Of a stretch of 64,000 nt of DNA, positions 39,147-63,841 are shown one piece after another. The notes under the pieces were generated by a model. The model was not told where the DNA came from. It did not search any database and was given only the letters and a program-made list of their open reading frames with translations. This DNA is from Obrimoposthia wandeli (taxonomy: Eukaryota): the NCBI GenBank assembly GCA_977020255.1, contig CDROCS010003176.1, positions 124,001 through 188,000 on the forward strand. The letters are read 5' to 3'. The stretch's first letter is position 1, and every line of letters starts with the position of its first letter. The position numbers were made by a program, and so were the translations under genes.

Positions 39147-39223
39147 GCTCGCTTAGCTCAGTTGGTTAGAGTACTTGCATGACATGCAAGGTGTCACTGG
39201 TTCGAGTCCAGTAGCGAGCACCA
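39147..39223 (+). tRNA. tRNA-Val(GAC)
   Basis: 77-nt cloverleaf; anticodon stem CTTGC/GCAAG with loop ATGACAT; TTCGAG T-loop; encoded CCA. Confidence 0.95.
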
Positions 39224-39268
39224 AATTTTAGATAGCACGCAATAGCTTGTTATCGCACAGTACAATTT

Positions 39269-39345
39269 GCTCGCTTAGCTCAGTTGGTTAGAGTACTTGC
39301 ATGACATGCAAGGTGTCACTGGTTCGAGTCCAGTAGCGAGCACCA
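39269..39345 (+). tRNA. tRNA-Val(GAC)
   Basis: Identical second copy. Confidence 0.95.
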
Positions 39346-39389
39346 GTTTTAGATAGCACGAAATAGTGTGTTATCACACAGTACAATTT

Positions 39390-39466
39390 GCTCGCTTAGC
39401 TCAGTTGGTTAGAGTACTTGCATGACATGCAAGGTGTCACTGGTTCGAGTCCAGTAGCGAGCACCA
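39390..39466 (+). tRNA. tRNA-Val(GAC)
   Basis: Identical third copy. Confidence 0.95.
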
Positions 39467-54730: not shown

Positions 54731-55096
54731 TTATTCAGGTATGGCTACTTCAACACCCATTCTTTTTCTAATATGAGCAAGAGATTTATTAACCGTATGT
54801 TTGAAATCCGAAAGGCTTCCCTTCTTGGCTCCGAATTCACATGCTTCATGCACTTGCTCTAGTGCTTCCGATAGATAACCGAGCGCATCTAACTCTTCAG
54901 AAAAGAAGGCTTCAATATTGTTAAAGTTATACCGTGCCGATAGAAATCTGTATAAATTGTAAACGTCTGTATTTTCCCAAGAGGTTAGTGCATGAATTAA
55001 TTCATCTTTCGTGAATTGTAGCGGCCAACAAATATTGGCCAAGATCTTAGAGTTTTGCGCAGAATATAACTGCGTTAGTGCATTTAATTGCCCCAC
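54731..55096 (-). other. Hypothetical ORF, possibly the C-terminal remnant of a larger gene
   Basis: 121-aa open frame with no evident RBS, inside a degraded region. Confidence 0.4.
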
Positions 55097-55142
55097 AGCA
55101 ATAAAGGAGGCTAGGTATAGAATATATGTAGGAGGGCGAAAT

Positions 55143-55535
55143 ATGAAAAATGGCGACGAAAAAGTAACTGTTTATTACGATGGCAGCTGCCCGCGTTGTA
55201 TTAAAGATCGTAATAATTATCAAAATCTGGCTGAAGAGAAAGGCGATTCGGTATGCTGGGTTGATATTACCGGGCAGGAAAAGTTGCTGCAGCAGCTAGG
55301 TATCGACCCCCAGAAAGCATTGACCGAACTGCATGTTAAAACAGCAAGTGGGAAAGTTTTGAGCGAACTTGATGCGTATATCCTGTTAATGAGCCGAGTC
55401 AGTCGTCTTAAACCGCTGGCTTTTTTTATCGGCCTGCCGTTTATTCGTCCACTTCTGGCCCGCTATTATCACTATAGTGTGGCTAAACGGCTGAAGAAGA
55501 GCGGCCGCTACCCGCAGCGTCAAAATCGGAAATAA
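55143..55535 (+). CDS. DUF393/DCC-family thiol-disulfide oxidoreductase-like protein
   Basis: YYDGSCPRC (DxxCxxC); GGAGG RBS before MKNG. Confidence 0.85.
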   Translation: MKNGDEKVTVYYDGSCPRCIKDRNNYQNLAEEKGDSVCWVDITGQEKLLQQLGIDPQKALTELHVKTASGKVLSELDAYILLMSRVSRLKPLAFFIGLPFIRPLLARYYHYSVAKRLKKSGRYPQRQNRK

Positions 55536-56114: not shown

Positions 56115-57611
56115 TCACGCATTAATAAGTACTAGAGAATCTAAGATCCCTTGACCGCTATGAATACCGCCTTCATTTTCACTGGCAGGCTTACTGCGGA
56201 TTAAGTAACCAGCATAGCCGTCTAGCTCCGTTACAGGCTCACCTTGATAATGGGCGGTAAACAAGCCGATTTCGCTCACAAGATCGTTCACCAACGCCTG
56301 CTTTCCATCACGAACCGCAATGGTTGGCGTATCTCGCTCATGCGGATACAAACGCTGCATCAATGCCCATGCGTCATACTCTTCTGGCTTCAATTTGGCT
56401 AATGTCTCACTGATCTGATCTCCGAATACGCAATGCCCACCACCTTCGCCTTGGTTCTTGAGTACCCACTCTTGCTTATCGGCAGAGGTATTAAACCATT
56501 CTATTGCCTCCTTCGAAATGGGCTTCATATCCGCCAAGACACTCTTGACTAATCGAGCTTCTTCTAGGGTTAACCCCCAACGGGCATACTCTTGTGCAGG
56601 CATCATGGTCAATAGCATCTGCATTGATTTACTCGTTGCAAGCTGCTGGCTGATGGTCGCGTTCATTGCTACGTAATGCATTTCAATAAACAGACGCGTT
56701 TGGCTTAATGTGTGACAGCAAATATCTTCATTCAACTCTGGTGCCCAGTAGTCTGAATATTGATAGCCCGCACGTAAGTAAACCGTGTCAATTGCGCCAA
56801 CATTTTCAAGAATTAAGCGCTGATTGTCACCACTAGAGAGCTGAGTGCTCAATTGCTCAAAGGTACGTCTTACTGTGCGAACCCCAATCTTTTGCAATGC
56901 AACTTCCAATAGGTGCTGATCGTAAACATTGTCTTCATCTTTCTGCACAATCATCAGGAAAGTTGGCTTTTGTTCGTTCGCACTATCACCCAGTTCAGCA
57001 AAGTGCGCCTTTACCTTTCTTGCTGAGGCAGCAATACCTATAGCGAGTTGTTCCATGCCGTGATTGTCTGCTGGCATTGCCGTATCGTCTTCTAACCAAT
57101 TACGGTAGACATCGTTCCATTGGTCTTGCACAAAGCAATGCAGCTCTGTAGCACGCTGACCAAATGGCCCCATACCTGCAGCAATACCATTGAATTCGAT
57201 CACTTTTGCCCCATGCTGGCGATCATCCATAAAATCGGTACGCATCAAAAGTAGTGGCTGGCGAGCAGCTTGCTGACGCTTAGATGCATCACCATGTGCC
57301 TGCTGATGTAGCTCCATCAAACGACCAAAAAACGGGTCAGCCTTTGCCATGGCACTAAGCGACTCTTGCAAGAAATCATGATCTTCAGACACGTTGCTTA
57401 CCAACTTAGCAATCAGTGGTGTAACAGAAAGCAGGTGTTGGTACACAGAGCGTTCCATCGTCATCGGTGCGATGCTGAATGGTACGTGCCTTGCCGTATT
57501 ATCGGCCTGACGAAACGCGACGCCGTGCATAATTTCCCACTCTAGGAGATCGTCAATGACTTCTTGAGGCATAAATTGCTTATTTTCGTTATTAATAGTG
57601 TCGTTATTCAT
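56115..57611 (-). CDS. Eukaryotic-type glutathione-synthetase-fold ATP-grasp ligase
   Basis: RTDF, IEFN, YLRAGY, VLKNQGEGGG, SEIG, GYLIRSK...EGG...LDS; 498 aa, unlike the shorter bacterial GshB. Confidence 0.85.
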   Translation of the reverse strand: MNNDTINNENKQFMPQEVIDDLLEWEIMHGVAFRQADNTARHVPFSIAPMTMERSVYQHLLSVTPLIAKLVSNVSEDHDFLQESLSAMAKADPFFGRLMELHQQAHGDASKRQQAARQPLLLMRTDFMDDRQHGAKVIEFNGIAAGMGPFGQRATELHCFVQDQWNDVYRNWLEDDTAMPADNHGMEQLAIGIAASARKVKAHFAELGDSANEQKPTFLMIVQKDEDNVYDQHLLEVALQKIGVRTVRRTFEQLSTQLSSGDNQRLILENVGAIDTVYLRAGYQYSDYWAPELNEDICCHTLSQTRLFIEMHYVAMNATISQQLATSKSMQMLLTMMPAQEYARWGLTLEEARLVKSVLADMKPISKEAIEWFNTSADKQEWVLKNQGEGGGHCVFGDQISETLAKLKPEEYDAWALMQRLYPHERDTPTIAVRDGKQALVNDLVSEIGLFTAHYQGEPVTELDGYAGYLIRSKPASENEGGIHSGQGILDSLVLINA

Positions 57612-57639: not shown

Positions 57640-59529
57640 TTATGCCGCGCTCACAGCCGTTAGGCCTAGCGTGCTATTTTGATGTTCGTTTTCTTCTTGC
57701 GCTTTCTGTGCAAGGTATAAATCTCGGTAATCGCCATCTTGTTCGATTAGCGCCTGGTGTGTACCACTCTGTACCACCCTACCGCTGTTCATCACTAAGA
57801 TTTGATCGGCGTTTTGAATCGTCGATAAGCGGTGCGCAACGGTGATAACGGTTCTGCCGTCTTGGATATTCTCAAGAGCCTGCTTTACCGTTTCTTCCGA
57901 TTCACTGTCGATATTCGCCGTCGCTTCATCAAGCAGGAATATTTTCGGATCGTGAGAAATCGCACGCGCTAATGCCAATAACTGTCTTTCACCCACAGAA
58001 AGCGTAGCGCCGCCATTGCTTGGTTGATGATCAAAACCACCAGGTAAACGATGAATGAAGCGATCCGCTTTCACCATTTCGGCTGCTTGTATCGCTTTAT
58101 CACGGCTAGCTTTTAGTGCTTTATTGTCATTGTCATTGTCATTGTCATTAAGCGTACTGTCATCACTCGTATAGCCATGACTAAAAGCAGCATCATGAGA
58201 TAAATCGATATTATCAATAATTGAACCGCTAAAGATGGTTGGGTCTTGTGATACCAAGCCAAACAGCTTACGCAGTTGTGATTCAGGCAGTTTATTAAGC
58301 GGTTGTCCGCCAATAAGGATGTCGCCTTGCTGCTGTTGATAAAAACGCATCAACAGATTGATCACCGAACTTTTCCCGCTTCCGGTATGCCCAACAATCG
58401 CTGTAAACTCGCCACCTTTTGCCGTAAAGCTGACATCTTTGAGTACTGGCTTATCGACTTCGTATCCCATTGTTACATTACGAAACTCAATATCGTTGCT
58501 ATCATTTATCTTCACTTCCGGCATCGATTGATTATGAATTTCAGAATCATCGTCTAGCAGCTCAAAAATACGTTTCGAAGACACGGTTGCAACCTGCAAC
58601 TTGTGCAGTTCCATCGATAACTGTCGGAACGGGTCAAAGAAGCGCTCAATGTAATTCAAAAACGCATATAAAGTACCAATCTCAACAACGGTCGACATCG
58701 ATGCTCCTGCAAACCACGCTACAATGCCTGCTGCTGTCAACGTCGAAATCAAGCGTGTCAGTGGTAACAACATCAAGCTATCAATTGCGACTGACTTAGC
58801 ACGGAAGTTAAACCAGCTTTGGTTATCTTTCTCAAACTTAGTTTGGAACGCCTTTTCTTGACGAAACGCTTGAATCAACGCCATGCCTTGCAACGATTCG
58901 TTTATTTGCCCGTTAATATTACTGACTTGAACTCGAATACCATCAAACACTGACATTGAAATCTTGCGATACAAATGCATCGTCATCAACAAAATAGGAA
59001 TCAGCACCAAACTGAGCAACATCAAACGCCAATCCAATAATGCAATTGCGATGAAAATAGCCGTGATGCGCAATGCACCTTGAATCACGGTTGGAATCGT
59101 CGACACGTACATATTACGTAGCGATTCAGTATCGTTGGTAATGTAAGAGACCAGTTTACCCGTTGATAATTTATCGAACGTCGCGATAGGAAAGTTCAAT
59201 ACATGGCGGAATAGTTGTTCACGTACGTCTTTAACCACCAGCAATGCACTGTGTTTAAAGGTGACCGCTTGTAAATACCCAAACACCGCGGCAAACACAT
59301 AGAACAGCATCATAAGCCCGATCAATGTGATAAGTTGTTGCCATTCAAATTGCTGAGGCACAATGACCTCATCCAACACAATTTTAGCCAACCATGGAAT
59401 CGCCATCTCGGCACTGACCGCAAGCGCCAACATCAAAAAGGCAAAGCCAAACCGCGCTTTGTGCGGCAATGAGAAGGTCAATAAACGGCGATAAAGCGCA
59501 TTATCTTTCATTTGACGCTTACTCATCAT
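57640..59529 (-). CDS. Heterodimeric ABC exporter subunit (MdlB-like)
   Basis: TMD+NBD; GHTGSGKS, degenerate signature LSVGERQ, canonical LLDEAT and VAHRL. Confidence 0.9.
   Translation of the reverse strand: MMSKRQMKDNALYRRLLTFSLPHKARFGFAFLMLALAVSAEMAIPWLAKIVLDEVIVPQQFEWQQLITLIGLMMLFYVFAAVFGYLQAVTFKHSALLVVKDVREQLFRHVLNFPIATFDKLSTGKLVSYITNDTESLRNMYVSTIPTVIQGALRITAIFIAIALLDWRLMLLSLVLIPILLMTMHLYRKISMSVFDGIRVQVSNINGQINESLQGMALIQAFRQEKAFQTKFEKDNQSWFNFRAKSVAIDSLMLLPLTRLISTLTAAGIVAWFAGASMSTVVEIGTLYAFLNYIERFFDPFRQLSMELHKLQVATVSSKRIFELLDDDSEIHNQSMPEVKINDSNDIEFRNVTMGYEVDKPVLKDVSFTAKGGEFTAIVGHTGSGKSSVINLLMRFYQQQQGDILIGGQPLNKLPESQLRKLFGLVSQDPTIFSGSIIDNIDLSHDAAFSHGYTSDDSTLNDNDNDNDNKALKASRDKAIQAAEMVKADRFIHRLPGGFDHQPSNGGATLSVGERQLLALARAISHDPKIFLLDEATANIDSESEETVKQALENIQDGRTVITVAHRLSTIQNADQILVMNSGRVVQSGTHQALIEQDGDYRDLYLAQKAQEENEHQNSTLGLTAVSAA
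58123..58146. repeat. (ATTGTC)4 in-frame microsatellite (Asn-Asp run) inside the NBD
   Basis: Read directly; encodes NDNDNDND in an insertion before the signature motif. Confidence 0.9.
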
Positions 59530-61312
59530 CTTTTCCCTCAATGCCAGTACCTTGAATAGCAGCATCGCCACTTATGGACAGCCCCAACTGGCTTTGACGT
59601 TGATAAACCATTGAATACCAGCCTTGATTCGCCACAAGCGCATGGTGTGAACCACGCTCTTCTACTTGCCCATCATTGAGCACTAAAATATGATCAGCTT
59701 CGATAATATTGGTTAGACGCTGCGTTACAAGCAACATGGTTTTATGGGAATAATGCGCCTTTAGGTTTTGACGAACTTGCACTTCAGTCTTCATATCTAA
59801 CGCACTAAATGGATCATCCAACAAAAGGATATCAGCACCCGACAATAGAGCTCTAGCAAGAGTCAAACGCTGTTTTTGACCACCCGACAGATTCGTACCG
59901 CCCTCTCTAAGTGAAGTATCAAAGCCTTCAGGCATCGCTTCAATTTCTGCTCGAATACCCGCCATTTCAGCCACATGCTCGATTTCTGCTTGCGACGCAT
60001 CAGGTTTCGCCAACGCGATATTCTCTGCGATAGTGCCTGAAAACAAGTGCGGTTTTTGAGGAACCCAAGCCAGCTTACTGCGTAAGGAACCAAACGTTAG
60101 GCTGTCGCTTGGCATACCTGAAATGTGAATACTCGACGGCTTCTCAAGTTGAAATTGGCGCAGTGCCAAGTGCAATAGCGTACTTTTACCGCTGCCCGTT
60201 GGCCCAGTAATGCCGACCAACCCACCCGATGGCAAATCAAATTTCACTTTATCGAGCGCTTTACGATTCGCTTTTTGATAAGTGAATGATTTGATATCAA
60301 AAGACATACTTGCATCCGCTGTTTTCGGCAGTGTTATGTCACCTTCTACGACTTCAATATTTTCAGCAAATAACTGCTCTAGACGACGCCATGACGTCTT
60401 ACCTCGTTGAAATACATTGAACTGCCAACCAAACTGCATAAATGGCCCAAGTAGTTGCCCAAGGTAAAGTGTAAAGGTAGTAAACAATCCCACAGTTATG
60501 CCGCCTTGTTCTATCAACCATGCTCCGTAGCCTAGTGAGATGACGAACGACAGCCCATAGACTAATTGAATAGTGGGACCAAATGCCGCATCCACTTTTG
60601 CAACTAAAAGATTTGCATCTACCGTTTCATCTAAGGTTTTGCCAAAGCGCTGTTCTTGACGATCAGAAATGCCGTGTGAGCGAACCGCACGAATACCCGA
60701 TACCGTTTCACGAGTCTCTTCGGTTAGATCAGAAAACGCAGATTGCGCCTTACCGAACGCCTTATGTAGCTTGACACCATAGCGGCGAGTAATGAGTACT
60801 AATAATGGGAAGGGAAGCAATGCGACAGCGGTAAGTTCACCACTAACAACAAAGATCATTCCCAAAATGACCGTAATACCTGCGATCAAAGAGTCCACCA
60901 ATGTCATGACCCCCATTCCCATGGTTTCTTCCACCGCATTAAGGTCATTGGTCGCATGTGCCATCAGATCCCCTGTACTTCTGCGAGCATAGAATTCAGG
61001 TGACAATTGAGAGAACTTTTGAAACAACTCACTTCGAATCACACGCGTTATCGCAATAGAAGCACCATATAGTTTGCTTTGCCATACAAAACGCAAACCG
61101 TACATTACCGCGCCCGAGACAATAATCCCGGCAACATGGGTGATCATAGCTTGAGAGTCTAATGTTCCTTCACTAATGCCGTCGACAATTCGACCAATCA
61201 ACCATGAAGGAATCAAATTGACCAACGCAACCACCTGCAATGCCGCAAAGGCAATCAGATAGTGTCGGCCAAACATTTTAAGGTAGCCCTTTAATTTCCA
61301 AAGAATATTCAT
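59519..61312 (-). CDS. Heterodimeric ABC exporter subunit (MdlA-like)
   Basis: TMD+NBD; GPTGSGKS, canonical LSGGQ, degenerate Walker B LLDD and switch VTQRL. Confidence 0.9.
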   Translation of the reverse strand: MNILWKLKGYLKMFGRHYLIAFAALQVVALVNLIPSWLIGRIVDGISEGTLDSQAMITHVAGIIVSGAVMYGLRFVWQSKLYGASIAITRVIRSELFQKFSQLSPEFYARRSTGDLMAHATNDLNAVEETMGMGVMTLVDSLIAGITVILGMIFVVSGELTAVALLPFPLLVLITRRYGVKLHKAFGKAQSAFSDLTEETRETVSGIRAVRSHGISDRQEQRFGKTLDETVDANLLVAKVDAAFGPTIQLVYGLSFVISLGYGAWLIEQGGITVGLFTTFTLYLGQLLGPFMQFGWQFNVFQRGKTSWRRLEQLFAENIEVVEGDITLPKTADASMSFDIKSFTYQKANRKALDKVKFDLPSGGLVGITGPTGSGKSTLLHLALRQFQLEKPSSIHISGMPSDSLTFGSLRSKLAWVPQKPHLFSGTIAENIALAKPDASQAEIEHVAEMAGIRAEIEAMPEGFDTSLREGGTNLSGGQKQRLTLARALLSGADILLLDDPFSALDMKTEVQVRQNLKAHYSHKTMLLVTQRLTNIIEADHILVLNDGQVEERGSHHALVANQGWYSMVYQRQSQLGLSISGDAAIQGTGIEGKDDE

Positions 61313-61329
61313 AATTACACAGTTTTCTC

Positions 61330-62985
61330 TTAAGCTTGGTTTGCCTGAGTTTGGGGCGAATGGCACCGAATTGGCTGCAGACTCGTTGCATGCGAAAGAT
61401 CATCACAATCAATTAGGCTCTTTTGTGCAACATATTCCTCAAAACTCACTTCTTGAACTGCTTCTAGCTGTTTTTGCTTAAGCAAAGACGCCTTCGCAAG
61501 CGATTCTAGTTTGGTCATTTCATCCAAAGAAATAGTCTTATCTAAGTACCCCTGTATATGTTGCTGAAAGCATGCGTTAATAAATGCAGTATGGCTCTGC
61601 CTCTCTTGTTTCATACGGGTTAAAACCTGTGCCGATGGCGTTAATGCGCTGTCTTCAAACTTTGCTTTTTCACGCATCACAGCGCTCTCATAATCGTCAC
61701 TTTGATGGGGATTACTCATACCTTTCGCCATTTCAGCTAGCGCGTTCATTAATGGTGCGGCCAAATCAATAAGCGAAATATCTCCGTCCATAGTTGGCAG
61801 TATCAACCCCTGTTTTCTACCTTGCATGGCAACCAATTCTTGTCTTTCCATAATGAGTGTACTTTCCTGCTCACTCATTTTTGGGCTTGGTGCTAGTGCG
61901 CTATAAATCAGAAACAGATCAAGAAACTGGCTCTGCAACTCATCAATACCCAAAGGTAGCAAGGGGTTATTATCCAAACTGCGTAATTCAATGTATTGCA
62001 CACCGTAGTGGCACATCGCAACTAAGGGACGCATTTCTGCATTTACTATTTTAGGACGAACAGAACCATACAGTTCATTTTCTAATTGGAGAACAGATCC
62101 GTTCAATTGTTGGTCACTTGCCAAATGTGTATATCGCTTACTTGGTTTAGTCAACGCATTACATAGCCCAGTGAGGTATTCTTCTTTATTGTTAAAGCTC
62201 ATAGAGAAATGAGATTGCTCACTACTGCCATACCCAAGATTACTCAAGCGCAGCGATGTGGCCCAGGGTAAATAATCGGTAGTGTCGTCCCATTGCTCTA
62301 ATGCACGGGGCTTACCTTGTAGATAGCTCTTATCGACGACAGGTGAAGCTCCAAACAGATATGGAATAATCCAGCCATGGCGTAATACATTGCGAATCAA
62401 ATGAAAATAACGTTCAGAAATAAACGTTTCTAACGGCAACTTACTTTCAGTATGTACATGAAGCGCCTTCCAAAAACTGTCTGGTAATGAAAAATTGTAG
62501 TGAATGCCTGAAATGAGCTGCATCCGCTTTCCATAACGATTGGCTAGCCCTTCACGGTAGCGAGCCTTCACCATTCCAGCATTCGAAGTACCGTAACGAG
62601 CAATAGGAATATCGTGATCATCAGGCAATGCAGGGGGCATACTCGCAGCCCACATCGACTCACCCTCATTCAAATTAGTCGCAACAAAGTGGTGTAAAGA
62701 AGCCAGTGTTTCAAATGTCTCACTTCTCTCATTAACCGCAGGAGTCACTAACTCTAGCTGCGCTTCTGAAAAATCGGTGGTGATGTACGGATGAGTAAGT
62801 GCAGAGCCCAAAGATACGGGATGTGGTCGTTGAGAAAGCGCCCCATTGGGTGTAATTCGAACCATTTCACGTTCAATTCCACGGCGAACATCACGCAGGG
62901 TTTCTTTCACTTGATCGCTTGCTAAAAATTCCAGCATTTCTATAACTGGTGTCTTAACTTCAGAGGGGATAGCTTCATTTCTCAT
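61330..62985 (-). CDS. gshA: Glutamate--cysteine ligase
   Basis: RGIERE, GSALTHPYITTDFSEAQLELVTP, MQLISGIHYNFS, YIELRSLD. Confidence 0.9.
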   Translation of the reverse strand: MRNEAIPSEVKTPVIEMLEFLASDQVKETLRDVRRGIEREMVRITPNGALSQRPHPVSLGSALTHPYITTDFSEAQLELVTPAVNERSETFETLASLHHFVATNLNEGESMWAASMPPALPDDHDIPIARYGTSNAGMVKARYREGLANRYGKRMQLISGIHYNFSLPDSFWKALHVHTESKLPLETFISERYFHLIRNVLRHGWIIPYLFGASPVVDKSYLQGKPRALEQWDDTTDYLPWATSLRLSNLGYGSSEQSHFSMSFNNKEEYLTGLCNALTKPSKRYTHLASDQQLNGSVLQLENELYGSVRPKIVNAEMRPLVAMCHYGVQYIELRSLDNNPLLPLGIDELQSQFLDLFLIYSALAPSPKMSEQESTLIMERQELVAMQGRKQGLILPTMDGDISLIDLAAPLMNALAEMAKGMSNPHQSDDYESAVMREKAKFEDSALTPSAQVLTRMKQERQSHTAFINACFQQHIQGYLDKTISLDEMTKLESLAKASLLKQKQLEAVQEVSFEEYVAQKSLIDCDDLSHATSLQPIRCHSPQTQANQA

Positions 62986-63048: not shown

Positions 63049-63184
63049 ATTTTTTAAACAATTTTTCCAAAAAATTAAAATATAGATAGAGGCAAGGTGA
63101 AGAAGCTCTTCTAAAAGAAGAAAACGACCCAGAAAGTAAGTCGATTTATAGAAAAAAGTACCAATGAAATGTTAAAGATCAGGC

Positions 63185-63739
63185 TTAACCCACACCGTTA
63201 CTTTTAGCGAATTCAGCACACTCTGCTTTGGGATAGAAATCAATGATACCTTCGCGTCCCGTTTCCACATTACAGCAATTCGTTAGAATTTCTTTAAGCT
63301 TAACTCGGCCACGTTGAACCCGACTTTTCGTTCCGGATAATGACAACCCTAATTGTTCAGCGACTGCCTGTTGAGATAATCCATCTAATTCAGAAAGAAT
63401 CATTGCTTGGCGATATTTCTCTGGCAAACAATCAAACATCGGGCGTAAGCACTGCGCCATAGTTTGTAAATTGACAACTTCAGCAGGCACCTCTTCTTCT
63501 GTTAGGTTATCCATCAGCTCTTCATGGCTTTGGTGCGATCGGTAGAAATCCATAATCGTATTATGAGTAATGCGATACAGCCAATTTTTAAGTTTATCTT
63601 TAGCTTCTAGCTGATGAATTTTCTGGCTTGCTTTGATGTATACCTCTTGCAAGATATCGTCAGCTAAGTCTAGATCACCTGTTTGTTTCACTATGTAACT
63701 TCTTAATTGGTCTTTGTGTGTTAACCACTCCGCTAGCAT
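63185..63739 (-). CDS. sigZ: ECF RNA polymerase sigma factor, SigZ-like
   Basis: DDILQEVYIK, WLYRITHNTIMDFYR, region 4 LSLSGTKSRVQRGR, C-terminal NCC. Confidence 0.85.
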   Translation of the reverse strand: MLAEWLTHKDQLRSYIVKQTGDLDLADDILQEVYIKASQKIHQLEAKDKLKNWLYRITHNTIMDFYRSHQSHEELMDNLTEEEVPAEVVNLQTMAQCLRPMFDCLPEKYRQAMILSELDGLSQQAVAEQLGLSLSGTKSRVQRGRVKLKEILTNCCNVETGREGIIDFYPKAECAEFAKSNGVG

Positions 63740-63841
63740 AGCCTTTCCTCAATTTACGATGCTTACTTACTATATTTCGATGATAATAGAATTATAAGTA
63801 AATTTAAAGTGTCAAAGACCAAGTAAGTCGATTGTTAGTCT

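What the first reader, a model, noticed from the sequence alone, without database searches (positions are those of the whole stretch)
56148..56174. Specificity loop of the GS-fold ligase reads GGIHSG rather than GGVAAG
Seen: the C-terminal segment is EGGIHSGQGILDS, with His484-Ser485 at 56157-56162. Established: in eukaryotic-type GS this loop is GGVAAG, and changing those two residues to Leu-Pro is what makes plant homoglutathione synthetase accept beta-alanine instead of glycine. Other motifs also deviate (KNQGEGGGHC for KPQREGGGNN; EFNGIA for EFNTIS). Inference: the enzyme may ligate an amino acid other than glycine, giving a new glutathione analogue.
Basis: partly seen in the sequence, partly recalled or inferred. 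Interest (0 to 1): 0.72.

Follow-up and report, generated by a model that had tools for sequence, protein, structure and literature searches.

The report
Bacterial glutathione-synthetase relative with His-Ser loop
A marine Photobacterium carries an extra glutathione-synthetase-like enzyme of the type usually found in eukaryotes; its unusual His-Ser loop is real and strictly conserved, but it marks a whole untested bacterial branch of the family and does not by itself show that a new glutathione analogue is made.

Summary
ORF 56115-57611(-) encodes a 498-aa glutathione synthetase (GS) of the eukaryotic fold, and its alanine-rich loop reads GGIHSG (His484-Ser485 = 56157-56162).

- **Conservation.** The dyad is invariant in 119 of the 120 closest homologues (the exception ends inside the loop). 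Synonymous codon changes around it show purifying selection.
- **What the His marks.** In a tree of 138 family representatives, His at this position defines one well-supported branch of 38 rows. Every named one but a single protist transcript is gammaproteobacterial. This branch also differs from canonical GS in the glycine-rich loop.
- **What is unchanged.** All ATP/Mg, gamma-Glu-Cys and acceptor-carboxylate (Arg450-equivalent) residues are kept, so it is very probably an active gamma-Glu-Cys:amino-acid ligase.
- **Why the analogue inference is weak.** Published structures show this loop binds glycine through main-chain amides. Proven GS enzymes vary at both positions (T. brucei Val-Met, S. 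pombe Ala-Thr, nematode clades) and still prefer glycine.
- **Context.** The gene ends a SigZ - gshA - ABC - ABC - GS operon. Relatives sit beside ArsR/MarR regulators, ArsP, Grx2 or GST genes, which suggests stress-induced thiol synthesis and export.

My odds are about 50% glutathione and about 33% another acceptor. No member of the branch has been assayed. The scan has already noted SigZ-linked glutathione-type modules on another piece of this genome.

The parts
56115..57611 (-). GS-like ligase gene, 498 aa, eukaryotic GS fold (PF03917 + PF03199)
   Evidence: AF2 model pLDDT 94.9 with TM 0.83-0.89 to 3KAL/2HGS/1M0W/5OES
56148..56174 (-). A-loop, residues 480-488 EGGIHSGQG (canonical E/D-GGVAAG-x-A)
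56157..56162 (-). His484-Ser485, aligned with human Ala462-Ala463 and soybean hGS Leu487-Pro488
56190..56198 (-). Arg472-Ser-Lys474 = human Arg450 (acceptor carboxylate) and Lys452 (ATP); invariant in 77 family members
   Evidence: role from PMC2845819
56430..56459 (-). G-loop, residues 385-394 KNQGEGGGHC (canonical KPQREGGGNN); Lys, Glu and the Gly triad are kept, while Pro365/Arg367/Asn372/Asn373 equivalents are changed
57171..57197 (-). Residues 139-147 EFNGIAAGM: Mg ligands Glu/Asn are kept; the two Ser that contact Cys by backbone are replaced by Ala and Gly; Phe152 is replaced by Met
   Evidence: PMC5919673
57640..59571 (-). ABC exporter half-transporter, SmdB/MdlB-like (below equivalog cut-off)
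   Evidence: conserved upstream of GS in 13 of 18 related loci and in Ferrimonas
59519..61366 (-). ABC exporter half-transporter, SmdA/MdlA-like
61330..62985 (-). gshA, glutamate-cysteine ligase (TIGR01434 489.6 bits, above the 393.3 cut-off); present in the operon in only some species
63185..63739 (-). ECF sigma factor SigZ (TIGR02959 above cut-off) with a Cys-rich C-terminal tail
   Evidence: ECF238 background PMC7826278
63134..63146 (-). AATCGACTTACTT, copy 2, upstream of gshA (candidate operon promoter element)
   Evidence: the pair is conserved in three Photobacterium loci
63821..63833 (-). AATCGACTTACTT, copy 1, upstream of sigZ

Best explanation
The gene encodes an active, accessory ATP-grasp ligase of a bacterial-specific branch (the 'His-clade') of the eukaryotic-fold glutathione synthetase family. 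It binds gamma-Glu-Cys in a canonical pocket, phosphorylates the Cys carboxylate, and adds a small amino acid whose carboxylate is held by the conserved Arg472. That amino acid is most likely glycine, giving glutathione. The gene is the last one of a SigZ-driven operon (gshA, two ABC half-exporters, GS). The operon probably raises thiol synthesis and exports the product under metal or thiol stress. The His484-Ser485 dyad is a lineage signature that changed together with the G-loop: the equivalents of Arg367 and Asn373 are lost, and His is gained on the facing loop. I read this as a different way of closing the two lid loops over the active site, not as a homoglutathione-type specificity switch. 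Shown: fold, conserved catalytic and substrate residues, clade structure, selection on the dyad, and operon conservation. Inferred: glycine as acceptor, export of the product, the stress trigger, and the compensatory reading of the loop changes.
For: - Both Pfam GS domains match (2e-59, 6e-19).
- PDB GS and hGS match at E 4e-43 to 1e-33 over the full length.
- The AF2 model has pLDDT 94.9 and best matches closed GS/hGS structures, TM 0.83-0.89.
- Invariant in 77 aligned family members: R124, E139, N141, N228, R280, Y283, K328, K385, E389, G390, G391, E447, R472, K474. E226 and Q232 are at least 90% conserved. These are the human R125, E144, N146, E214, N216, Q220, R267, Y270, K305, K364, E368, E425, R450 and K452.
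- The two Ser-to-Ala/Gly changes are at backbone-contact sites where small residues are tolerated (PMC5919673).
- The A-loop binds glycine through main-chain amides, and GS enzymes with other dyads still use glycine.
- The residues before Arg472 are Leu-Ile, as in GS, not Met-Val as in hGS.
- Context: a bona fide gshA sits in the same operon. gshA-ABC-ABC-GS recurs in Ferrimonas at 58% identity with Grx2 next door. Grx2, NemA-like and GST genes lie nearby in V. owensii and a metagenome relative. ArsR/ArsP neighbours appear in 4 of 4 type-B loci.
- Contigs 95-99% alike from a sediment metatranscriptome lie on GS and both ABC genes (a weak hint only).
Against: - No member of the His-clade has been assayed.
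- The protein scores 238 bits against the TIGR01986 cut-off of 329.8. NCBI calls the named type-B relatives 'hypothetical'.
- His484 is 100% conserved on its branch. It co-varies with changes at positions that are 94-99% conserved in canonical GS (Arg367, Asn373), which is more than drift.
- Vibrionaceae, to my knowledge, already have a canonical GshB (not tested here). A second glycine-adding enzyme is then redundant except for its regulation, especially where the gene stands alone without gshA or an exporter (Harveyi-clade loci and Haliea).
- A dedicated exporter could equally point to a distinct product.
- Loop mutations can broaden acceptor choice (PMC3473041).
Confidence: 0.5

Rival explanations
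1. One reading: the enzyme uses gamma-Glu-Cys but adds an amino acid other than glycine (for example Ser, Ala, beta-Ala, Cys or Glu). The product would be a new glutathione analogue that the co-encoded ABC pair exports. His484/Ser485, together with the altered G-loop, would reshape the acceptor pocket.
For: - The dyad is strictly conserved with synonymous codon turnover.
- The A-loop and G-loop are remodelled together across the branch.
- The protein is below the equivalog cut-off.
- It is an accessory gene with a dedicated exporter.
- Some copies stand alone, where a second GSH-making enzyme would add little.
- Precedents exist for acceptor switches in this fold: soybean hGS, the S. pombe LP mutant that accepts Ser, and rice OsGS2, which makes gamma-Glu-Cys-Ser (title and abstract).
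- Arg472 is kept, so the acceptor is a carboxylate-bearing amino acid rather than an amine.
Against: - The loop contacts the acceptor through the backbone, and dyads other than Ala-Ala are compatible with glycine preference in tested enzymes.
- The position after His is free to vary (R/K/Q/S/A/W) in the sister type-B clade, which is unlike a specificity determinant.
- The neighbours are glutathione-dependent proteins (Grx2, GST).
- I know of no unexplained thiol reported from Vibrionaceae (own knowledge, not searched exhaustively).
Confidence: 0.33
2. The enzyme has a different acyl donor (not gamma-Glu-Cys), as proposed for nematode clade-3 GS-like effectors or fungal Cp1B, or it is a non-catalytic paralogue.
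For: The fold has been re-purposed before: Gpa-GSS22/30 (PMC5919673) and Cp1B of E-64 biosynthesis (PMC12568646; 9CJN is a distant fold hit). Ser149 and Ser151 equivalents are replaced.
Against: The whole gamma-Glu pocket (Glu, Asn, Gln, Arg, Tyr) and the Cys-side Arg are kept (the Asn, both Arg and the Tyr invariant, Glu and Gln at least 90% conserved), unlike in the nematode effectors, where all six positions vary. All ATP/Mg ligands and the Gly triad are kept. gshA is co-operonic.
Confidence: 0.07
3. The His-Ser dyad has no functional meaning at all: neutral drift frozen in one lineage.
For: Both positions vary in canonical GS.
Against: His is invariant in all 38 rows of the branch, down to 25-30% identity. 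Ser is invariant in the window subclade down to 36% identity, with synonymous codon changes.
Confidence: 0.05

Closest known systems
Eukaryotic glutathione synthetase (human 2HGS, yeast 1M0W, potato 5OES, T. brucei 2WYO; EC 6.3.2.3)
   Same: Same fold and domain order (TM 0.8-0.89). All ATP/Mg ligands, the gamma-Glu-Cys pocket, and the Arg that binds the glycine carboxylate are kept.
   Different: 24-25% identity. A-loop is GGIHSG-x-G instead of GGVAAG-x-A. G-loop is KNQGEGGGHC instead of KPQREGGGNN. IAAGM replaces IS-x-SF. It is below the TIGR01986 cut-off. It is bacterial, accessory, and in an operon with gshA and an ABC exporter.
Soybean/Medicago homoglutathione synthetase (3KAJ/3KAK/3KAL)
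   Same: The deviation lies at the same two loop positions that set beta-Ala versus Gly preference. 3KAL is the best structural match.
   Different: The dyad is His-Ser, not Leu-Pro. The two residues before the Arg are Leu-Ile, not Met-Val. hGS keeps the canonical G-loop, whereas this protein does not (alignment).
Nematode GS-like proteins (Lilley et al. 2018, PMC5919673)
   Same: Family members that lack the Ala-Ala dyad. Clades 1 and 2 show that such enzymes can still prefer glycine.
   Different: Clade-3 effectors have lost the gamma-Glu pocket and canonical activity; here the pocket is intact.
Bacterial GshB (E. coli type, PF02955/PF02951)
   Same: Same reaction class (ATP-grasp gamma-Glu-Cys:Gly ligase). 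It is presumably the housekeeping enzyme of the same hosts.
   Different: No detectable sequence match (only PF03917 and PF03199 hit). A different, non-permuted ATP-grasp family.
CydDC thiol exporter of E. coli (functional analogy for the operon)
   Same: A heterodimeric ABC exporter linked to glutathione/cysteine export. The two ABC proteins here hit the CydD/CydC models weakly.
   Different: Their best matches are SmdA/SmdB (MdlAB)-type models, all below cut-off. The substrate is unknown.

Membership tests
Eukaryotic-type glutathione synthetase (PF03917/PF03199, TIGR01986) | Both Pfam domains above the gathering score | tested here: met
   PF03917 201.7 bits (cut-off 25) and PF03199 69 bits (cut-off 20.9)
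Eukaryotic-type glutathione synthetase (PF03917/PF03199, TIGR01986) | GS three-dimensional fold | tested here: met
   AF2 pLDDT 94.9, pTM 0.93. Foldseek TM 0.83/0.88 to 3KAL, 0.83/0.87 to 2HGS, 0.80/0.89 to 5OES
Eukaryotic-type glutathione synthetase (PF03917/PF03199, TIGR01986) | ATP/Mg ligands (human E144, N146, K305, K364, E368, E425, K452) and the Gly triad | tested here: met
   All are present and invariant, except the third Gly of the triad (at least 90% conserved), in the 77-sequence alignment
Eukaryotic-type glutathione synthetase (PF03917/PF03199, TIGR01986) | gamma-Glu-Cys pocket (R125, E214, N216, Q220, R267, Y270) and Arg450 for the acceptor carboxylate | tested here: met
   R124, E226, N228, Q232, R280, Y283 and R472 are present. 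The S149/S151 equivalents are Ala/Gly; these are backbone contacts
Eukaryotic-type glutathione synthetase (PF03917/PF03199, TIGR01986) | Canonical G-loop KPQREGGGNN (Arg 99% and second Asn 94% conserved in canonical members) | tested here: not met
   KNQGEGGGHC
Eukaryotic-type glutathione synthetase (PF03917/PF03199, TIGR01986) | Ala-rich A-loop GGVAAG-x-A | tested here: not met
   GGIHSGQG. However, the dyad is variable in accepted GS
Eukaryotic-type glutathione synthetase (PF03917/PF03199, TIGR01986) | NCBIfam equivalog score cut-off | tested here: not met
   238.3 bits against 329.8
Eukaryotic-type glutathione synthetase (PF03917/PF03199, TIGR01986) | Catalyses gamma-Glu-Cys + Gly + ATP to GSH | not testable with these tools
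   No assayed member of the His-clade was found in the literature searches
Homoglutathione synthetase | Leu-Pro dyad in the A-loop plus Met-Val before the Arg | tested here: not met
   His-Ser and Leu-Ile
Nematode clade-3 GS-like effectors | Diversified gamma-Glu pocket with loss of canonical activity | tested here: not met
   The pocket is canonical
Prokaryotic GshB (PF02951/PF02955) | Match to the GshB domains | tested here: not met
   Only PF03917 and PF03199 hit

The most novel reading that the evidence does not exclude
The whole bacterial His-clade (window subclade GG[IV]HSG + HC; sister clade G-V-H-x + N[VI]) makes a so far unknown gamma-Glu-Cys-X thiol in response to metal or metalloid stress (SigZ/ArsR/MarR control). 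In Vibrionaceae a dedicated ABC pair would export it. This would be a new low-molecular-weight thiol of marine gammaproteobacteria.
Probability: 0.3. Interest if true: 0.8.

Novelty: new variant of a known kind. Interest (0 to 1): 0.45.

Why it matters
Low-molecular-weight thiols (glutathione, homoglutathione, mycothiol, bacillithiol) define the redox and metal chemistry of whole lineages. Here a sizeable, untested bacterial branch of the GS family has both active-site lid loops remodelled. It sits in metal/arsenic/electrophile-stress contexts, and in Vibrionaceae (oyster and fish pathogens included) it is tied to its own gshA and exporter.

If it simply makes glutathione, it defines an inducible synthesis-and-export module. 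It would also show that the Ala-Ala dyad, Arg367 and Asn373 are dispensable for GS chemistry. If it makes an analogue, that is a new bacterial thiol. Either answer needs only one enzyme assay and one thiol profile.

Tried and rejected
- **Literature.** Four searches for an assayed bacterial eukaryotic-type GS or a named second GS found nothing relevant. A search for Vibrio LGP32 copper/glutathione data was noise. The rice OsGS2 paper gives no loop residues. The 2026 hGS preprint gives no roles for Asn373 or Ala462.
- **Signal scans.** The promoter/terminator consensus scan of the operon was at shuffle level.
- **Canonical gshB.** tblastn with E. coli GshB against the window and all held loci found nothing. 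Co-occurrence with canonical GshB therefore rests on my own knowledge.
- **Failed look-up.** The context look-up for the Aliikangiella protein P0158 found no record.
- **Model geometry.** Residue-level geometry of His484 in the AF2 model could not be examined, because coordinates are not exposed.
- **Rejected readings.** An hGS-type beta-Ala enzyme (no Leu-Pro, no Met-Val), a nematode-effector-like donor change (pocket intact), and a pseudoenzyme (all catalytic residues kept).
Full report
**1. The observation**

The ORF 56115..57611 on the minus strand encodes 498 aa. Its C-terminus reads ...NEGGIHSGQGILDSLVLINA. His484 is at 56160-56162 and Ser485 at 56157-56159. The protein matches both Pfam domains of eukaryotic glutathione synthetase (PF03917 2e-59, PF03199 6e-19). 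It scores 238 bits on the NCBIfam equivalog TIGR01986, below the 329.8 cut-off.

Against solved structures it aligns over its full length with potato GS 5OES (4e-43), soybean homoglutathione synthetase 3KAJ (7e-39), yeast GS 1M0T (8e-39) and human GS 2HGS (1e-33). GGIHSG lies opposite GGVAAG in the GS enzymes and GGVLPG in hGS.

**2. It is selected, not chance**

KNQGEGGGHC and EFNGIA are invariant in the 120 closest database homologues, and GGIHSG is in 119 of them; the one exception ends inside the loop. These homologues are 78-98% identical and come from Vibrio splendidus/crassostreae, Photobacterium, Aliivibrio, Shewanella and Thaumasiovibrio. Across 28 loci the His codon is CAT or CAC and the Ser codon AGC, AGT or TCT, while the amino acids stay fixed.

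**3. Where it sits in the family**

A search of 1.84 billion cluster representatives gave 1399 relatives. I aligned 138 full-length ones and built a tree. His at window position 484 marks one side of a branch with 98% local support: 38 rows against 100.

The His side has three parts:
- **The window subclade** (10 rows, support 96): GG[IV]HSG, KNQGEGGGHC and E-x-N-x-IAAGM. It includes Ferrimonas, Haliea and Aeromonas MAGs.
- **A sister 'type B' clade** (27 rows, support 100): x-G-V-H-[RKQSAW]-[GA] with K-x-x-x-EGGGN[VI]. It includes Aliikangiella and gammaproteobacterial MAGs, which NCBI calls 'hypothetical protein'.
- **One long-branch protist transcript**, from Dysnectes.

The other side holds canonical GS (KPQREGGGNN). 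It includes eukaryotes and also some bacteria, such as a SAR324 MAG with GGVSAG. Within it the first dyad position is Ala 74%, Ser 17%, plus Met/Asn/Cys/Ile. The second is Ala/Ser/Thr/Val/Lys/Gly.

Columns that are conserved on both sides but differ between them cluster in the two lid loops and the strand after the Mg ligands:

| Human residue | Window residue |
|---|---|
| Pro365 | Asn |
| Arg367 | Gly |
| Asn372 | His |
| Asn373 | Cys (Val in type B) |
| Tyr375 | Phe |
| Ala462 | His |
| Ala466 | Gly |
| Phe152 | Met |

**4. What is unchanged**

In a 77-sequence alignment spanning both sides, these columns are invariant: R124, D126, E139, N141, N228, D231, Y278, R280, Y283, K328, Q331, K385, E389, G390, G391, M418, E447, G449, G468, R472, K474 and G482.

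Using the human alignment, they include the Mg/ATP ligands E144, N146, K305, K364, E368, E425 and K452. They also include the gamma-Glu-Cys pocket residues R125, N216, R267 and Y270; E214 and Q220 are at least 90% conserved. Arg450, which salt-bridges the glycine carboxylate, is kept too (PMC2845819).

The two serines replaced by Ala144 and Gly146 contact the cysteine through their backbone, and small residues are tolerated there (PMC5919673). An AlphaFold2 model (pLDDT 94.9, pTM 0.93) best matches the closed, ligand-bound forms of hGS, human, yeast and potato GS (TM 0.80-0.89).

The protein is therefore very probably an active ligase. It most likely uses gamma-Glu-Cys and an acceptor that carries a carboxylate.

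**5. Does His-Ser predict a non-glycine acceptor?**

The literature I could read says not by itself.
- Fyfe et al. 2010 state that the A-loop binds the glycyl carboxylate through the main-chain amides of Val461/Ala462 (Val541/Met542 in T. brucei GS). They report that the first position varies among 23 eukaryotic GS from Ala to Ser, Ile, His and Met, and the second is Ala, Ser or Gly.
- Lilley et al. 2018 found that nematode clade 1 and 2 enzymes lacking the Ala-Ala dyad still strongly prefer glycine.
- S. pombe GS is naturally Ala-Thr. Changing that dyad to Leu-Pro alone kept glycine affinity and added serine. The beta-Ala preference also needed the two residues before the Arg. Those residues are Leu-Ile here, GS-like.
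- In the sister type-B clade the residue after His is freely variable, which is unlike a specificity determinant.

On the other side:
- The invariant His co-varies with the loss of two nearly invariant G-loop residues, which points to a real functional change at the lid.
- The same papers show that loop changes can shift acceptor choice.
- Rice OsGS2 makes gamma-Glu-Cys-Ser (title and abstract).

My reading is inference only: His484 on the A-loop compensates for the lost Arg367/Asn373 on the facing G-loop, giving a different closure of the two loops.

**6. Context**

The gene is the last of a tightly packed minus-strand unit:
- sigZ, 63185-63739 (TIGR02959 above cut-off, with a Cys-rich tail)
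- gshA, 61330-62985 (TIGR01434 above cut-off)
- an SmdA-like ABC half-exporter, 59519-61366
- an SmdB-like ABC half-exporter, 57640-59571
- the GS-like gene

An exact 13-mer, AATCGACTTACTT, lies upstream of both sigZ and gshA. The same pair is kept in three Photobacterium species, where the second copy precedes whichever gene follows sigZ. SigZ belongs to ECF238, the CorE-like metal-responsive group with a Cys-rich C-terminus (PMC7826278).

In 19 species genomes:
- ABC-ABC-GS is conserved in 13 of the 18 loci compared.
- gshA is inside the unit in only five (P. profundum, Vibrio sp. F74, V. jasicida, V. thalassae, Thaumasiovibrio) and absent in P. frigidiphilum and P. indicum. The operon copy is therefore accessory.
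- Five Vibrio copies stand alone: V. makurazakiensis, V. owensii, V. rotiferianus, Vibrio sp. WZ-1 and Vibrio sp. PID17_43. In V. owensii the neighbours are NemA-like, Grx2, MFS and LysR genes.

Other relatives show similar settings:
- Ferrimonas has MarR-gshA-ABC-ABC-GS with Grx2 next door.
- An Aeromonas MAG has ArsR, a phosphatase-like gene and an MFS gene, then GS.
- All four type-B loci examined have an adjacent ArsR-type regulator, and two have an ArsP_1 permease directly upstream.

The common theme is metal, metalloid or electrophile stress and glutathione-dependent partners. This fits inducible thiol supply, and it fits glutathione slightly better than an analogue.

Contigs 95-99% alike from a marine-sediment metatranscriptome lie on GS and both ABC genes. 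This is only a hint of expression, since RNA libraries can carry DNA.

**7. Organism**

The window's genes are 93-99% identical to P. profundum ATCC BAA-1252, P. frigidiphilum and P. indicum, so the window is a Photobacterium of that group. Earlier scan notes describe SigZ-linked glutathione-type synthesis and export on another piece of this 'genome' and call it Moritella-like. I did not resolve that discrepancy.

**8. Verdict**

The 'established' premise is overstated. The inference is open. My odds are:

| Reading | Odds |
|---|---|
| Glycine acceptor, glutathione product | about 0.50 |
| Another amino-acid acceptor | about 0.33 |
| Other donor or non-catalytic | about 0.07 |
| Dyad functionally neutral | about 0.05 |
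| Readings I have not named | the remainder |

What is new is the recognition that His-Ser belongs to a coherent, unassayed bacterial branch of the GS family with both lid loops remodelled. I searched for any biochemical characterisation and found none.

That Vibrionaceae also carry canonical gshB is my own knowledge and was not tested here.

Noticed in passing
window 63134-63146 and 63821-63833 (minus strand); L001, L002, L016: Two exact copies of AATCGACTTACTT, one upstream of sigZ and one upstream of the gene that follows it. The pair is conserved in three Photobacterium species, including those whose operon lacks gshA. It is a candidate SigZ-dependent promoter element. The spacing to the downstream GGTC differs by 4 nt between the two copies.
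   Followed up: partly
L001 vs L002/L016: The operon shows gshA presence/absence polymorphism within one genus. P. profundum and the window have sigZ-gshA-ABC-ABC-GS; P. frigidiphilum and P. indicum have sigZ-ABC-ABC-GS.
   Followed up: partly
L020, L021, L025, L026: All four examined members of the sister 'type B' clade sit next to an ArsR-family (HTH_20/HTH_5) regulator. Two have an ArsP_1 permease immediately upstream on the same strand. This suggests metalloid-responsive control of an uncharacterised GS-like enzyme.
   Followed up: partly
P0242: A protein from the EukProt transcriptome of the protist Dysnectes brevis carries the bacterial-type signatures (GGVHAG, KNQGEGGGYC, IAAGM). It falls outside the canonical eukaryotic clade on a long branch. 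This is either lateral transfer or bacterial contamination.
   Followed up: no
window 58123-58149 (minus strand, ABC half-exporter 57640-59571): An (Asn-Asp)n repeat, NDNDNDNDN, is inserted in the nucleotide-binding domain. A metatranscriptome contig of a close relative lacks 6 nt at 58131, so the repeat length is polymorphic.
   Followed up: no
window 55011-55535 (+): A DCC1-like thiol-disulfide oxidoreductase (PF04134) lies convergent with the GS gene. It is kept only in the closest Photobacterium loci (L002, L016), not elsewhere.
   Followed up: partly
window 39147-39466 (+): Three tandem tRNA-Val(GAC) genes.
   Followed up: no
earlier notes s1-244680 / s1-244667: The scan's notes call another piece of 'this genome' Moritella-like, whereas this window is 93-99% identical at protein level to Photobacterium profundum/frigidiphilum. 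The 'genome' may be a mixed bin.
   Followed up: no
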